From positions 17,980,001 through 18,044,000 of the forward strand of contig NC_043023.1 in NCBI RefSeq assembly GCF_006345805.1: 64,000 nucleotides of DNA, written 5' to 3'. Shown here one piece after another: positions 4,954 to 59,579 of the stretch. A program made the position numbers and the translations under genes. Below the pieces are notes generated by a model, which was given only the letters and a program-made list of their open reading frames with translations, was not told the DNA's origin and ran no database searches. Position 1 is the stretch's first letter. Every line of letters begins with the position of its first letter. Origin of the DNA: Octopus sinensis (lineage: Eukaryota).

Positions 4954-5025
4954 ATATCTGAACGACAATAACATAACGTATATTCAACGTGATATCTTTG
5001 CAAACCTTCCGAATTTAGAAGAATT
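4954..5025 (+). CDS. LRR exon 1 (72 nt, phase 2/2): [24 protein letters not shown]
   Basis: tgttacag|a tat ctg ... gaa tt|gtgagt; LxxLxLxxNxI consensus completed across the junction. Confidence 0.92.
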
Positions 5026-59000: not shown

Positions 59001-59579
59001 AGTGGGCAAAAAGTTCTCTACTTGTCTATGCGTGTCTGCATGTGTGGATGGATGGATGGATGGATGGACGGATAGATATATGGACAGATGGATGGTTATC
59101 TTTATTTCTAATAGAGCCACAACCCTCTCTGTCTTGGAGTAGTGACAAAGATGATTATACTGACATCAGGAGTTAACAAGGTACTAGTAGCAGTCATACT
59201 AAAGCAAAGGAATTATGTCTTTATACACTGATATCCATCATCAGTAGATGAAGGTTTGTTTTGTCAATCAATTTTATATAATGATGGAATTTAGATTTCC
59301 GTGATTAGGACAAGAACATTTCCATGGAAACAAGTTAGATTTCCTTGTAAGTAAAACAATTCTGGTGAGTGTCGTTTAAACTAATTATATATTGTAATAT
59401 CTTTTAAAAATCCTATTTCAGCTTCGAAAAGAATAGCGAAGTATTTACTATTACTTGCATAGTACTACGTACAACTACTAAAGACCAAATTTTTACACAA
59501 GTTTTCGAAGCTTTTCAGACATCACAGACTTTGCGTGATTTGGGATTGCAACAACGGAACATGGAGTTAATTAATGAAA
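4954..59579 (+). CDS. Partial multi-exon gene (13 exons, ~417 aa): LRR x7 - LRRCT - Ly6/uPAR-like - SEA-like ectodomain of a probable cell-surface receptor; 5' and 3' ends not seen
   Basis: join(4954-5025,9545-9616,14948-15016,22129-22200,26851-26922,28076-28147,34451-34522,38293-38462,43358-43449,45461-45644,49574-49668,52521-52573,59422-59579). Every exon is AG/GT-bounded. Entry phases 2,2,2,2,2,2,2,2,1,0,1,0,2 chain into one stop-free frame. Multiple N-x-S/T sequons (NIT, NLS, NYT, NNT, NVS, NST) fit a secretory-pathway ectodomain. Confidence 0.88.
5650..6560 (-). mobile_element. IS630-Tc1-mariner transposase remnant (maT/DD37D-like)
   Basis: Minus-strand translation near 5900-6000 gives [23 protein letters not shown], matching the WPxxSPDLNPLDxxxW motif. 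Confidence 0.65.
6892..6963 (+). pseudogene. Dead LRR exon (72 nt): [24 protein letters not shown], both splice sites mutated
   Basis: Upstream aacttttatgttaggg vs aacttttatgttacag in live exons (AG>GG). Downstream ct|ggaaga vs ct|gtaagt (GT>GG). Exactly 72 nt, and the conserved intronic ttcattga follows at the usual distance. Confidence 0.75.
9545..9616 (+). CDS. LRR exon 2 (type A, 72 nt): [24 protein letters not shown]
   Basis: ctgttacag|a tac ttg ... tat ct|gtaagc. Confidence 0.93.
10200..10415. repeat. ~105-110 bp tandem duplication/minisatellite
   Basis: cttatcacag(a/g)tttttaaa...cttattag...aatccatagtg(t/a)agattta(a/c)atttccag occurs twice. Confidence 0.8.
11557..12130 (-). mobile_element. 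RTE/RTEX-type LINE 3' end with (GAT)n tail
   Basis: [48 protein letters not shown]; catcatcat tract right after the ORF end. Confidence 0.85.
14948..15016 (+). CDS. LRR exon 3 (type B, 69 nt, one codon shorter): [23 protein letters not shown]
   Basis: ttttacag|g tat ttg ... act ct|gtaagt; in-frame 3-nt deletion relative to the exon at 22129. Confidence 0.85.
15325..16100 (-). mobile_element. Mariner transposase remnant
   Basis: Minus strand [19 protein letters not shown] (mariner VWWD motif) and a C-terminal VDNESDY-like end near 15410-15430. Confidence 0.7.
16107..17317 (-). mobile_element. 5'-truncated Penelope-like element (GIY-YIG end) with an inverted copy of its 3' pLTR
   Basis: Minus strand: [14 protein letters not shown] linker, [24 protein letters not shown]. 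16107-16293 and 17130-17317 are diverged inverted repeats. Confidence 0.82.
17706..18711 (+). mobile_element. Tc1-like transposon, degenerate, 3'-truncated
   Basis: ta|cagggattggacaaaataatg TIR; [26 protein letters not shown]-terminus at 17883; [10 protein letters not shown] and ccagatcttaatattattgaacat (SPDLNIIEH) DDE motifs. Confidence 0.9.
19204..19345. repeat. ~45-bp AT-rich tandem repeat x3 inside a locally duplicated AT-rich block (18775-18880 similar to 19472-19572)
   Basis: aattaaaaataaataaatgaataaataaataaaagtaaaaatataca repeated; gatttgcctaa(c/t)agtggttttatctctaattt occurs twice. Confidence 0.8.
20060..20330 (+). mobile_element. Possible ITm transposase N-terminal remnant
   Basis: Fragmented translation ...[21 protein letters not shown] resembles the second HTH region of maT/Tc1 transposases. 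Confidence 0.35.
20575..21120 (+). mobile_element. Penelope-like 3' fragment (GIY-YIG) ending in a decayed hammerhead
   Basis: [30 protein letters not shown] with one frameshift; hammerhead-like fold at 21082-21118. Confidence 0.7.
22129..22200 (+). CDS. LRR exon 4 (type B, 72 nt): [24 protein letters not shown]
   Basis: ttttacag|a gat ttg ... act ct|gtaagt. Confidence 0.93.
23040..23225 (-). repeat. Interspersed repeat carrying a degenerate hammerhead motif (same family as 61800-61990)
   Basis: Reverse complement reads ctttctgtcaaagatcgtaggctcgaaacgtaaaagactt; the flanks align with the + strand copy at 61.8-62.0 kb. Confidence 0.75.
23232..24100 (+). mobile_element. Tc1-like element with both TIRs and an internal deletion
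   Basis: ta|caggggttggacaaaataatggaaacatc ... gatgtttccattactttgtcctaccgctg|ta; TA on both sides; transposase N- and C-terminal remnants. Confidence 0.9.
24945..25420 (-). mobile_element. CR1-type LINE 3' fragment with (AAT)n tail
   Basis: [23 protein letters not shown]...[21 protein letters not shown]; adjoining taa/tta microsatellite at 24858-24942. Confidence 0.82.
26851..26922 (+). CDS. LRR exon 5 (type A, 72 nt): [24 protein letters not shown]
   Basis: tatgttacag|a tac ttg ... tct ct|gtaagt. Confidence 0.92.
28076..28147 (+). CDS. LRR exon 6 (type A, 72 nt): [24 protein letters not shown]
   Basis: tatgttacag|a tat ttg ... tat ct|gtaagt. Confidence 0.92.
28397..29550 (+). repeat. ~1.15-kb imperfect (CTT/CCT)n polypyrimidine tract
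   Basis: Almost purine-free + strand; source of the spurious 447/452-aa ORFs. Confidence 0.95.
30290..33480 (+). mobile_element. CR1-type RT remnant split by the Gypsy insertion
   Basis: 30290-30453 reads [17 protein letters not shown]...KYYRS; 33310-33480 resumes ...[16 protein letters not shown]...HCFTQLL, the next RT motif. Confidence 0.6.
30454..33309 (+). mobile_element. Degenerate, internally deleted Ty3/Gypsy LTR retrotransposon (gag + integrase, no RT seen)
   Basis: Related LTRs 30454-30666 and 33062-33309, both starting tgtgcgagag; PBS-like tggcgatgag at 30669; PPT aaaaaggggga at 33051-33061; integrase motifs VSENGTQF and [13 protein letters not shown]; no TSD match. Confidence 0.87.
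34451..34522 (+). CDS. Terminal LRR exon 7 (72 nt): [24 protein letters not shown]
   Basis: ttttttccag|a aat ttg ... tac at|gtatgt. Confidence 0.92.
34805..35556 (-). mobile_element. Mariner deletion derivative with imperfect TIRs
   Basis: tacgaggtgtgttaaa ... ttttggacgcaccttgta; minus strand [18 protein letters not shown] (mariner HTH). Confidence 0.72.
36790..36960 (+). mobile_element. tRNA-derived SINE fragment
   Basis: B-box-like gagttcaaattc followed by catcctttcggggtcgat central domain; related pieces at 37050-37100 (+) and 50395-50460 (-). Confidence 0.65.
38293..38462 (+). CDS. LRRCT-like exon (170 nt, phase 2 to 1): [56 protein letters not shown]
   Basis: ataattgcag|t gac ctc aga aac aat ... 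caa a|gttagt; CxC...C...C four-cysteine cap after a final xLxxN. Confidence 0.88.
40184..40671. repeat. Minisatellite, ~130-165 bp units x3 plus a partial unit
   Basis: acaaagtt(a/t)ttt(a/g)ggacgaa...catctaaagttatctctaag...ttccatagaggtaa repeated; last unit cut by the Helitron. Confidence 0.9.
40672..41516 (+). mobile_element. Non-autonomous Helitron with a PIF1-helicase fragment
   Basis: 5' TC (a|tctttatatataaaag); 3' hairpin gcccc...cgggc then CTAG|t; A/T target; ORF 40919-41440 with [33 protein letters not shown]. Confidence 0.9.
43358..43449 (+). CDS. Ly6/uPAR-like domain, N-part (92 nt, phase 1 to 0): [30 protein letters not shown]
   Basis: ttgtatag|at tac ... gat gag|gtaaac; LxCxxC start motif typical of LU/three-finger domains. 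Confidence 0.87.
45461..45644 (+). CDS. Ly6/uPAR-like domain, C-part (184 nt, phase 0 to 1): [61 protein letters not shown]
   Basis: ctgttacag|cct gta tgc ... ata g|gtcagt; ends in the CCxxxxCN signature. Confidence 0.92.
47540..47630 (-). ncRNA. Mirror-image hammerhead ribozyme motif on the minus strand
   Basis: Same as the 48066-48156 copy except stem I CCUAUG, which gives a tolerated U-G wobble. Confidence 0.82.
48066..48156 (+). ncRNA. Type I hammerhead ribozyme motif, core intact
   Basis: Stem I CCUACG(48066-71)/CGUAGG(48151-56); CUGAUGA 48072-78; long stem II closed by G48079-C48138; GAAA 48139-42; stem III AC[GUAC]GU; GUC cleavage triplet ending at 48150. Confidence 0.85.
49574..49668 (+). 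CDS. SEA-like domain part 1 (95 nt, phase 1 to 0): [31 protein letters not shown]
   Basis: tttttccatag|gt tgg ... aga act|gtgagt. Confidence 0.85.
50815..51346 (+). mobile_element. Penelope-like element C-terminal GIY-YIG endonuclease fragment
   Basis: [24 protein letters not shown]...[16 protein letters not shown]...CRLCLLEK...[13 protein letters not shown]. Confidence 0.9.
52357..52395 (+). ncRNA. Minimal hammerhead-like motif, one mismatch at the base of stem II
   Basis: ugu CUGAUGA aCG[GCAA]CGa GAAA CU[CAG]AG UA aca; a related partial copy at 62081-62097 has cgtgaaactccgagta. Confidence 0.55.
52521..52573 (+). CDS. SEA-like domain part 2 (53 nt, phase 0 to 2): [18 protein letters not shown]
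   Basis: actattgcag|atg gag ... tgt gg|gtaagc; supplies exactly the phase 0-to-2 bridge needed between its neighbours. Confidence 0.85.
52761..53140 (+). mobile_element. Mariner 5' fragment (TIR + HTH), truncated at (CA)n
   Basis: tacgaggggt TIR; MEAVKYR...[23 protein letters not shown]...GRP. Confidence 0.85.
54696..55067 (-). mobile_element. Full-length tRNA-derived SINE with 13-bp TSD
   Basis: Minus strand head gtggaggcgcaatggcccagtggttaggg (A box) ... gtttcgattcc (B box); (CAAA)-like tail; tgcggttggtgct duplicated at 54683-54695 and 55068-55080. Confidence 0.92.
55574..58911 (-). mobile_element. Young 5'-truncated CR1-clade LINE: ORF1 C-terminus + ORF2 (APE-RT) with two 1-nt frameshifts, (TAAC)n tail
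   Basis: ORF1 58552-58911 (RPRPIRVIF); [15 protein letters not shown]; [35 protein letters not shown]; frameshifts near 58400 and 57750. Confidence 0.95.
59422..59579 (+). CDS. SEA-like domain part 3 (158 nt, phase 2 to 1): [52 protein letters not shown]
   Basis: cctatttcag|c ttc gaa ... gaa a|gtaagt; missed by the ORF track because it has no early start codon. Confidence 0.88.

What the first reader, a model, noticed from the sequence alone, without database searches (positions are those of the whole stretch)
4954..59579. Hidden LRR - LRRCT - Ly6/uPAR - SEA receptor ectodomain spread over 55 kb of TE-filled introns
Seen: 13 short exons chain in phase into ~417 stop-free codons, and several of them are absent from the ORF track. 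Knowledge: LU/three-finger domains are best known as small secreted or GPI-anchored proteins and toxins, and SEA domains are membrane-proximal in mucins and adhesion GPCRs. I do not recognise LRR-LU-SEA as a standard named architecture. Inference: this is the N-terminal part of a lineage-specific sensing or immune receptor, plausibly an adhesion GPCR whose HormR/GAIN/7TM exons lie beyond 64000. It may already exist in databases as an uncharacterised model.
Basis: partly seen in the sequence, partly recalled or inferred. Interest (0 to 1): 0.85.

Follow-up and report, generated by a model that had tools for sequence, protein, structure and literature searches.

The report
Octopus adhesion GPCR ectodomain exons
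The 13 small exons are real and encode the outer part of an octopus adhesion-type G-protein-coupled receptor whose remaining exons lie just outside the window; the gene belongs to a receptor family already known to have multiplied in octopuses, so it is a sound but fairly ordinary find.

Summary
Thirteen + strand exons between 4954 and 59579, all with AG/GT borders, join in phase into 1253 nt (417.7 codons) without a stop. They encode 7 LRRs, an LRRCT-like cap, one Ly6/uPAR (LU) domain and one SEA-like domain. Two more LRR exons lie 1.8 and 4.3 kb before the window. The 28-exon model gives 1136 aa.

GAIN+7TM is closest to ADGRG2 and ADGRG6 (E 4e-69, 3e-66). LU is well supported (profile against PDB: LYPD1 8e-9, and only three-finger proteins hit). 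SEA is supported only indirectly.

The genome appears to be Octopus sinensis. The family has at least 48-72 copies here and matches the octopus-specific adhesion-GPCR expansion of Ritschard et al. 2019. Full-length paralogues are in NCBI as 'ADGRG6-like'. The same architecture occurs in gastropods and bivalves. LU-bearing GPCRs were reported in 2024 and 2026.

Still open: the signal-peptide exon was not found, there are no transcript data, and I found no exact model of this locus.

The parts
4954..5025 (+). LRR exon (72 nt, phase-2 introns on both sides): [23 protein letters not shown]
   Evidence: part of the Pfam LRR_8 match
9545..9616 (+). LRR exon (72 nt): [23 protein letters not shown]
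14948..15016 (+). LRR exon (69 nt): [22 protein letters not shown]. With its intron flanks it is a 95%-identical copy of the exon 1.8 kb before the window.
22129..22200 (+). LRR exon (72 nt): [23 protein letters not shown]
26851..26922 (+). LRR exon (72 nt): [23 protein letters not shown]. It is a recent tandem copy of the next exon (92% identity over 639 nt).
28076..28147 (+). LRR exon (72 nt): [23 protein letters not shown]
34451..34522 (+). Last LRR exon (72 nt): [23 protein letters not shown]
   Evidence: conserved in paralogues
38293..38462 (+). LRRCT-like cap exon (170 nt, phase 2 to phase 1): ...[12 protein letters not shown]...GECQ...YSQCQ, four cysteines
   Evidence: It is 100% identical in O. 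vulgaris. There is no Pfam LRRCT hit.
43358..43449 (+). LU domain exon 1 (92 nt, phase 1 to 0): [23 protein letters not shown]
45461..45644 (+). LU domain exon 2 (184 nt, phase 0 to 1): PVCQFK...[13 protein letters not shown]
   Evidence: There are at least 72 copies in the genome, 71 of them open. Profile against PDB: LYPD1 at 7.9e-9.
49574..49668 (+). SEA-like domain exon 1 (95 nt, phase 1 to 0): [31 protein letters not shown]
52521..52573 (+). SEA-like domain exon 2 (53 nt, phase 0 to 2): [17 protein letters not shown](G)
   Evidence: found by tblastn with the O. vulgaris protein; splice sites checked
59422..59579 (+). SEA-like domain exon 3 (158 nt, phase 2 to 1): [24 protein letters not shown]...NMELINE
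   Evidence: There are at least 14 DNA copies in the genome. It is 94-96% identical to O. vulgaris 'ADGRG6-like' proteins.

Best explanation
The exons are the ectodomain-coding part of one large gene (at least 97 kb, at least 28 exons). It encodes an adhesion GPCR of the ADGRG-like branch, and it is one member of a family that is conserved in molluscs and has multiplied in octopuses.

The domain order is (signal peptide and LRRNT not found) - at least 9 LRRs - LRRCT - LU - SEA-like - HormR-like - GAIN/GPS - 7TM - short tail ending in ETNT.

Shown here: the exons, their phases, the domain matches, an intact GPS with the HL^T site followed by TSFALLM, and a complete seven-helix domain.

Inferred from what is established for adhesion GPCRs:
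- The LRR solenoid and the LU fingers bind an extracellular partner.
- The GAIN domain cuts itself at HL^T.
- Ligand binding or pulling on the N-terminal fragment exposes the tethered peptide TSFALLMNVYQ, which activates the 7TM domain and a G protein (possibly Gs, as for ADGRG2 and ADGRG6).

The LU, SEA-like and HormR modules are each bounded by phase-1 introns, and the LRR exons by phase-2 introns. Modules can therefore be gained, lost or skipped without breaking the frame. This fits the differing domain sets of the paralogues.
For: - Exon chain: a 28-exon, 1136-aa model with no stop and AG/GT at every junction.
- Downstream exons are 94-100% identical to O. vulgaris 'ADGRG6-like' P0054.
- Pfam: LRR_8 2.4e-45, GPS 5.4e-13, 7tm_2 7.1e-38 covering positions 3-250 of 250.
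- PDB sequences: ADGRG2 4.1e-69 and ADGRG6 3e-66 over GAIN+7TM.
- LU: the octopus profile hits only three-finger proteins, best LYPD1 at 0.01 with all 12 cysteines aligned. The mollusc-wide profile gives LYPD1 7.9e-9, LYPD6 2.9e-5 and SLURP1 1.2e-4, and all 11 hits are three-finger. Foldseek also finds Lynx2.
- SEA-like: AF2 gives a beta-alpha-beta-beta-alpha-beta fold at pLDDT 75-89 in two paralogues. Pfam SEA is the only family that recurs among the aligned segments (3 of 17, best 1.4e-6). It hits the Haliotis homologue at 342-434 (5.5e-5), where the octopus profile aligns.
- HormR: the segment is 52% identical to the P0122 copy that matches Pfam HRM at 5.2e-7.
- Full-length paralogue P0128 has signal peptide, LRRNT, LRR, LRRCT, LU, SEA-like, HormR, GAIN and 7TM in one model.
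- The O. vulgaris orthologous locus keeps all 19 checked exons open with their splice sites, and pN/pS is about 0.5.
- Family size: at least 72 LU exons, at least 70 first exons and at least 48 TM5-7 exons, nearly all open.
- Published expansion.
Against: - No transcript data were available, so no junction is proven for this locus.
- The first exon (signal peptide + LRRNT) was not found in 60 kb upstream by tblastn, regex or HMM, nor on this stretch of the contig. A 100-N gap lies 12.8 kb before the window.
- The window's own LU, SEA-like and HormR segments have no direct Pfam hit.
- No Foldseek hit reaches E <= 0.001, and the second model gives only generic ferredoxin-like matches.
- SEA profiles find no SEA domain among PDB sequences.
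- The annotated O. vulgaris orthologue starts only at the Met of SEA exon 2.
Confidence: 0.85

Rival explanations
1. There are two products rather than one. The LRR-LRRCT-LU-SEA exons make a secreted LRR protein (annotated 'slit-like'), either as a separate gene or as a short splice form that jumps from the last SEA exon to the tail exon. The GPCR would then be transcribed from an internal start.
For: The last SEA exon ends in phase 1 and the tail exon at 92691 accepts phase 1, giving ...MELINE-S-SETGDGTAETNT* in frame. Paralogue models P0009, P0010, P0022 and P0024 end exactly this way (...TGNGTEDRTAETNF/L) with no 7TM. Many O. sinensis fragments are named slit-, decorin- or chaoptin-like. 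The O. vulgaris orthologue model P0054 begins at the Met of SEA exon 2.
Against: A gene border at that Met would cut the SEA-like domain in two. Phases are continuous across it. Full-length models join all domains in paralogues and in other molluscs. P0054 also skips TM6-7, which are open and conserved in both genomes, so it looks like an incomplete prediction. A short isoform could coexist with the receptor rather than replace it.
Confidence: 0.1
2. The locus is a 5'-truncated duplicate (a pseudogene or unexpressed copy) that lacks a signal peptide and promoter, and its frame is still open only because the duplication is recent.
For: No first exon was found in 60 kb upstream. The family duplicates often and many copies sit on small contigs. 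pN/pS of about 0.5 rests on only 38 changes and is not strongly below 1. I found no exact model of this locus among proteins of 220-700 or 625-1988 aa.
Against: All 28 exons (3.4 kb) are open with perfect splice sites. The same exons are open in O. vulgaris. An assembly gap lies 12.8 kb upstream. First introns may be long, and I could not read further upstream.
Confidence: 0.05

Closest known systems
Octopus-specific adhesion-GPCR expansion ('group 3') of Ritschard et al. 2019 (PMC6408891)
   Same: These are class B receptors with GPS and an adhesion-type 7TM. LRRs were seen in 5 of 22 sequences, one has a Death domain (compare P0139), the genes are clustered, and the group is related to six human adhesion GPCRs. 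The window gene fits this description and lies in such a cluster.
   Different: That paper reported neither LU, SEA nor HormR domains, and counted about 21-22 sequences in two species. Here at least 48 TM exons and at least 72 LU exons are counted in one genome. I did not check by accession that this gene's orthologue is in their set.
Vertebrate ADGRG6 (GPR126) and ADGRG2
   Same: GAIN+7TM are the closest solved relatives (E 3e-66 and 4e-69). The membrane-proximal order SEA - HormR - GAIN - 7TM is that of ADGRG6 (my own knowledge of the zebrafish Gpr126 ectodomain structure, PDB 6v55). An HL^T site and a TxFxxLM tethered peptide are present.
   Different: ADGRG6 has CUB and pentraxin domains at its N-terminus, not LRR-LRRCT-LU. 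6v55 aligned only over GAIN and did not appear among the Foldseek hits.
Vertebrate ADGRA2/ADGRA3 (GPR124/125)
   Same: An N-terminal LRR block with an LRRCT is followed by HormR, GAIN and 7TM (my own knowledge). One O. bimaculoides relative is even named ADGRA3.
   Different: ADGRA receptors have an Ig domain where this protein has LU + SEA-like. The 7TM here is closer to ADGRG.
LU-domain GPCR-like proteins of starfish (LyAr2), molluscs and arthropods (PMC11595613, PMC13719153)
   Same: A single LU domain sits in the extracellular N-terminus of a 7TM protein. The figure legend lists LRR and GPS. The starfish LU is most like human Lynx2, as is the LU here.
   Different: Those surveys do not mention octopus, SEA, or the copy-number expansion. 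I could not see the figures, so identity of architecture is not verified.
LYPD1/Lynx2, LYPD6, SLURP1 (small GPI-anchored or secreted LU proteins)
   Same: The cysteine framework is the same, with 12 Cys including the CCxxxxCN end.
   Different: Those are single-domain proteins. Here the LU is an internal module of a 1100+ aa receptor, encoded by two exons bounded by phase-1 introns.

Membership tests
Adhesion GPCR (class B2) | Secretin-type seven-helix domain (Pfam 7tm_2) | tested here: met
   7tm_2 at E 7.1e-38, profile positions 3-250 of 250, residues 850-1088 of the model. TM6-7 are read in the same exon as TM5.
Adhesion GPCR (class B2) | GAIN domain with a GPS motif immediately before TM1 | tested here: met
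   GPS at E 5.4e-13, residues 793-837. GAIN+7TM align to ADGRG2, ADGRG6, ADGRG3 and ADGRL3 structures. Pfam GAIN itself scores only E 0.36.
Adhesion GPCR (class B2) | Autoproteolysis site HL^T/S and a tethered agonist (TxFxxLM) | tested here: met
   The sequence reads ...CSCDHL TSFALLMNVYQ..., and it is identical in O. vulgaris. Actual cleavage cannot be tested here.
ADGRG-like branch | 7TM/GAIN closest to the ADGRG members | tested here: met
   The best PDB hits are ADGRG2 (4.1e-69), ADGRG6 (3e-66), ADGRG3 and ADGRG4, ahead of ADGRL, D, E and F. No phylogenetic tree was built.
LRR with LRRCT cap | Tandem LxxLxLxxNxL repeats | tested here: met
   LRR_8 at E 2.4e-45, with 9 repeats in the model.
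LRR with LRRCT cap | C-terminal four-cysteine cap recognised by a profile | tested here: inconclusive
   The CxC...C...C motif is conserved in all paralogues. There is no Pfam LRRCT hit, and the AF2 model has low confidence there.
Ly6/uPAR (LU, three-finger) domain | Cysteine framework LxCxxC ... CCxxxxCN | tested here: met
   Twelve cysteines are invariant or nearly so across octopus and other molluscs, and they align one-to-one with LYPD1.
Ly6/uPAR (LU, three-finger) domain | Significant profile similarity to known LU proteins | tested here: met
   Profile A7 against PDB gives LYPD1 7.9e-9, LYPD6 2.9e-5 and SLURP1 1.2e-4, and all 11 hits are three-finger. Pfam Toxin_TOLIP matches 5 of 11 segments, CD59 2 of 11 and Activin_recp 1 of 11, all weakly. 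The window's own segment has no Pfam hit.
Ly6/uPAR (LU, three-finger) domain | Three-finger fold | tested here: inconclusive
   The AF2 LU region has pLDDT 24-67. Foldseek finds Lynx2 (6zss) only at E 0.066, TM 0.56.
SEA domain | Match to the SEA profile (PF01390) | tested here: inconclusive
   There is no hit for the window's segment. Homologous segments do hit: 3 of 17, best 1.4e-6. As whole proteins, Haliotis scores 5.5e-5 (23.7 bits against a cut-off of 26.4) and Argonauta 0.013. Profiles A3 and A6 find no SEA in PDB.
SEA domain | Beta-alpha-beta-beta-alpha-beta sandwich fold | tested here: met
   AF2 gives this topology with pLDDT 75-89 in two paralogues. The fold is shared with many ferredoxin-like domains. 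Foldseek hits to TMPRSS6 and MUC16 SEA5 are weak (E 0.013 and 0.07) and absent for the second model.
SEA domain | G^SVVV autoproteolysis motif in the beta2-beta3 turn | tested here: not met
   The turn reads [15 protein letters not shown]. Many true SEA domains also lack this motif, so the result bears on cleavage and not on membership.
HormR (HRM) domain | Match to PF02793 | tested here: inconclusive
   There is no direct Pfam or PDB hit. The segment is 52% identical to the copy in paralogue P0122 that matches HRM at 5.2e-7. The Dreissena homologue matches HRM at 0.0026 in the same position.

The most novel reading that the evidence does not exclude
The exon design may be used as a diversity generator. 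All LRR exons are symmetric (phase 2-2), and the LU, SEA-like and HormR modules and the tail exon are all joined through phase-1 introns. One gene could therefore make many receptor forms with different LRR numbers and module sets, plus soluble ectodomain forms, by alternative splicing. Across roughly 50-70 clustered paralogues this could give octopus peripheral neurons or suckers a combinatorial recognition repertoire comparable in logic to protocadherins or Dscam.
Probability: 0.15. Interest if true: 0.7.

Novelty: new member of a known kind. Interest (0 to 1): 0.35.

Why it matters
It corrects the annotation. This locus, and the N-terminal half of its O. vulgaris orthologue, appear to lack a full gene model. 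Many family fragments are misnamed slit-, decorin-, chaoptin-, TLR5- or SLITRK-like.

It gives a fuller domain map for the octopus adhesion-GPCR expansion: LRR - LRRCT - LU - SEA-like - HormR - GAIN - 7TM. It shows that this map is shared with gastropods and bivalves, which dates the architecture to before the octopus expansion.

It also suggests the expansion is larger than first counted. The phase-compatible module structure offers a simple account of how paralogues came to differ. The family is a candidate for contact sensing or cell recognition in arms and suckers, where earlier work found its members expressed. None of this overturns current understanding.

Tried and rejected
- Direct Pfam scan of the window's LU and SEA segments: no hit at E <= 1.
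- HMM profiles of the SEA-like region (octopus only, then mollusc-wide) against PDB sequences: no SEA, only chance-level hits.
- Foldseek of two AF2 models: nothing at E <= 0.001, mostly generic ferredoxin-like folds. The models had mean pLDDT of only 57 and 47.
- phmmer of the HormR-like segment against PDB: nothing.
- Search for the first exon by tblastn with 31 N-termini, by an LRRNT regex and by an HMM of 33 N-termini over 60 kb upstream: nothing. A cluster of weak hits at about -17.3 kb turned out to be a TA/CA microsatellite.
- Exon versus intron conservation against O. vulgaris: uninformative, because both are 96-100% identical.
- PF26588, listed for some paralogues, is not in the local Pfam copy.
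- The LRR-like ORF at 6893-6979 was rejected as an exon because it is in the wrong phase and has no usable splice sites.
- Chance ORFs or TE-derived coding sequence as an explanation: rejected on homology and on conservation of the frame.

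
Full report
**Origin of the window.** The window is G000:C27:17980001-18044000 of a 2.72-Gb genome. All close protein matches are from Octopus. The genome is therefore most likely O. sinensis.

**The observation.** Reading the + strand showed seven 72- or 69-nt exons. Each begins after a pyrimidine tract and AG and ends before GT(A/G)AGT, and each encodes one leucine-rich repeat as 1 nt + 22-23 codons + 2 nt.
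- A 170-nt exon at 38293 carries a CxC...C...C cap.
- Exons at 43358 and 45461 carry LQCQTC...CCIGNLCN.
- Exons at 49574 and 59422 carry an alpha/beta-looking segment.
- The thirteenth exon (52521-52573, [17 protein letters not shown]) was found by aligning an O. vulgaris protein to the DNA.

The thirteen exons sum to 1253 nt, or 417.7 codons, with no stop. The spliced product matches Octopus proteins at E = 6.8e-143.

**Beyond the window.** I fetched 60 kb upstream and 100 kb downstream.
- tblastn with O. vulgaris 'adhesion GPCR G6-like' P0054 placed 13 more exons at window coordinates 65025-92731, at 94-100% identity.
- The exon at 91033 reads through TM5, TM6 and TM7. A GTAAGT donor then leads to a 41-nt tail exon ending ...TAETNT*.
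- Two more LRR exons lie at -4367 and -1859.

Joined, the 28 exons give 1136 residues with no stop and AG/GT at every junction.

**Domains with direct support.**
- Pfam finds LRR_8 (2.4e-45), GPS (5.4e-13) and a full-length 7tm_2 (7.1e-38).
- Against PDB sequences, GAIN+7TM are closest to ADGRG2 (4.1e-69) and ADGRG6 (3e-66).
- The GPS reads CSCDHL-TSFALLM, which is the canonical cleavage site followed by a tethered-agonist motif.

**The LU domain.** The window's segment has no Pfam hit.
- A profile of 16 octopus copies hit only five PDB sequences, all three-finger proteins. The best was LYPD1/Lynx2 (E 0.01), with all twelve cysteines aligned.
- After adding the homologous segments of other molluscs, the profile gave LYPD1 7.9e-9, LYPD6 2.9e-5 and SLURP1 1.2e-4, then TGF-beta and activin receptor ectodomains. 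All eleven hits were three-finger proteins.
- Pfam families matched by the individual segments are likewise three-finger families, though weakly.
- Foldseek also found Lynx2, but the AF2 model is poor in this region.

I accept LU on sequence grounds. The fold itself remains unverified.

**The SEA-like domain.** Support is indirect.
- AF2 models of two paralogues give a confident (pLDDT 75-89) beta-alpha-beta-beta-alpha-beta unit. This is the SEA topology, but it is also that of many ferredoxin-like domains.
- Foldseek gave no significant hit. TMPRSS6 and MUC16 SEA5 appeared weakly for one model and not for the other.
- Profiles of the region found no SEA domain in PDB.
- When the 17 aligned segments from octopus and other molluscs were scanned singly, SEA was the only Pfam family matched more than once (3 of 17, best 1.4e-6).
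- In the Haliotis homologue, SEA matches residues 342-434 (E 5.5e-5, just under the curated cut-off), directly after the LU domain and where the octopus profile aligns.
- The position before HormR and GAIN is that of the SEA domain of ADGRG6 (my own knowledge).
- There is no G^SVVV motif.

I rate SEA as probable, at about 0.7.

**The HormR-like domain.** The segment has no direct hit. It is 52% identical to the copy in paralogue P0122 that matches Pfam HRM at 5.2e-7.

**Family and range.**
- In this genome the LU exon 2 has at least 72 copies, 71 of them open.
- The signal-peptide/LRRNT exon has at least 70 copies.
- The TM5-7 exon has at least 48 copies, 44 of them open.
- The copies are clustered on C29, C27, C8, C9 and C25.
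- A profile of LRRCT-LU-SEA matched only 49 of 1.84 billion representative proteins.
- The non-octopus hits are proteins of about 1100-1300 aa from Argonauta, Haliotis, Nucella, Dreissena, Ylistrum and Saccostrea, named ADGRG6- or ADGRG2-like, with LRR, GPS and 7tm_2.

The architecture is therefore mollusc-wide, and only the multiplication is octopus-specific.

**What was already known.**
- Ritschard et al. 2019 described this as an octopus-specific adhesion-GPCR expansion, with LRRs in some members, expression in axial nerve cord, suckers and skin, and signs of positive selection.
- LU-bearing GPCR-like proteins were reported in starfish in 2024 and in molluscs and arthropods in 2026.
- Full-length paralogue models exist in NCBI, for example P0128, with signal peptide through 7TM.

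**What is new or open here.**
- I found no exact model of this locus in either length class searched.
- In O. vulgaris the orthologous locus keeps all 19 exons from LRRCT to the tail open, with their splice sites (pN/pS about 0.5). The annotated model nevertheless starts at the Met of SEA exon 2 and skips TM6-7. The LRRCT, LU and first SEA exons lie unannotated upstream of it.
- The first exon of the window's gene was not found, and there is an assembly gap 12.8 kb before the window.
- No transcript data could be consulted.

**Gene design.** The LRR exons are flanked by phase-2 introns. The LU module (276 nt), the SEA-like module (306 nt) and the HormR module (285 nt) are each flanked by phase-1 introns, and the tail exon accepts phase 1. 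Paralogue models differ by exactly these modules:
- no LU (P0011);
- no SEA (P0023, P0035);
- LU joined directly to GAIN (P0016, P0029);
- three SEA-HormR units (P0122);
- ectodomain joined directly to the tail with no 7TM (P0009, P0010, P0022, P0024).

Within the gene, LRR exons have been duplicated recently together with their intron flanks (95% and 92% identity).

**Verdict.** It is a new member of a known kind, and of moderate interest.

Noticed in passing
window 14548-15416 against the region 1.8 kb before the window; window 26451-27322 against 27676-28547: Recent intragenic duplications of single LRR exons together with about 300 nt of intron on each side: 94.9% identity over 625 nt and 92.3% over 639 nt. 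Older copies link exon 9545 to 26851 and 28076 (71-75%), and the exon at -4367 to 22129 (78%). The LRR array is growing by tandem exon duplication.
   Followed up: partly
window 6893-6979 (+): An LRR-like open frame ([24 protein letters not shown]) between the first two LRR exons. It is in the wrong phase and has no usable splice sites, so it is probably a decayed LRR exon.
   Followed up: partly
window 55666-58400 (-): A non-LTR retrotransposon lies in the intron between SEA exons 2 and 3. It has a 711-aa ORF with a reverse transcriptase match (RVT_1, 5e-32), preceded by an endonuclease ORF (Exo_endo_phos, 2e-9 to 3e-12). I only annotated it.
   Followed up: partly
window 40871-41437 (+), 52921-53325 (+), 30939-32537 (+): Other transposon remnants sit in introns: a Pif1 helicase 2B domain (Helitron-like), a Mos1-type HTH (mariner-like), and a DUF7083 ORF next to an integrase-like ORF. 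A 207-aa ORF at 50723-51343 has no Pfam hit.
   Followed up: partly
window 59579 joined to the tail exon at window coordinate 92691 (outside the window): The last SEA exon and the tail exon are phase-compatible, so a 7TM-less secreted isoform ending ...MELINE-S-SETGDGTAETNT is possible. Four paralogue models end in just this way.
   Followed up: partly
L019 6388-6571 (O. vulgaris) against window 45461-45644: LU exon 2 carries 6 of the 38 coding differences between the two octopus species, and they change five residues (R>S, D>Y, GG>RR, I>R). Introns differ by only about 2-3%. This may hint at fast evolution of the LU fingers, but the numbers are too small to test.
   Followed up: partly
L019 10001-47050 (O. 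vulgaris OX597842.1): The annotated O. vulgaris orthologue (P0054, 668 aa) starts at an internal Met and splices out TM6-7, although both are intact in the DNA. The model looks incomplete at both ends.
   Followed up: yes
P0122 (O. vulgaris paralogue), residues 71-138, 240-317 and 412-480: One paralogue has three tandem SEA-like + HormR units. Another (P0139, O. bimaculoides) has a C-terminal Death domain.
   Followed up: no
throughout the window, e.g. 8059-9420, 12084-13170, 28289-30000: There are very long microsatellite and low-complexity tracts (TA, CA, CT/CTT-rich) with strong strand skew: GC skew reaches -0.68 at 28-30 kb. They create long spurious open frames of up to 454 aa.
   Followed up: no
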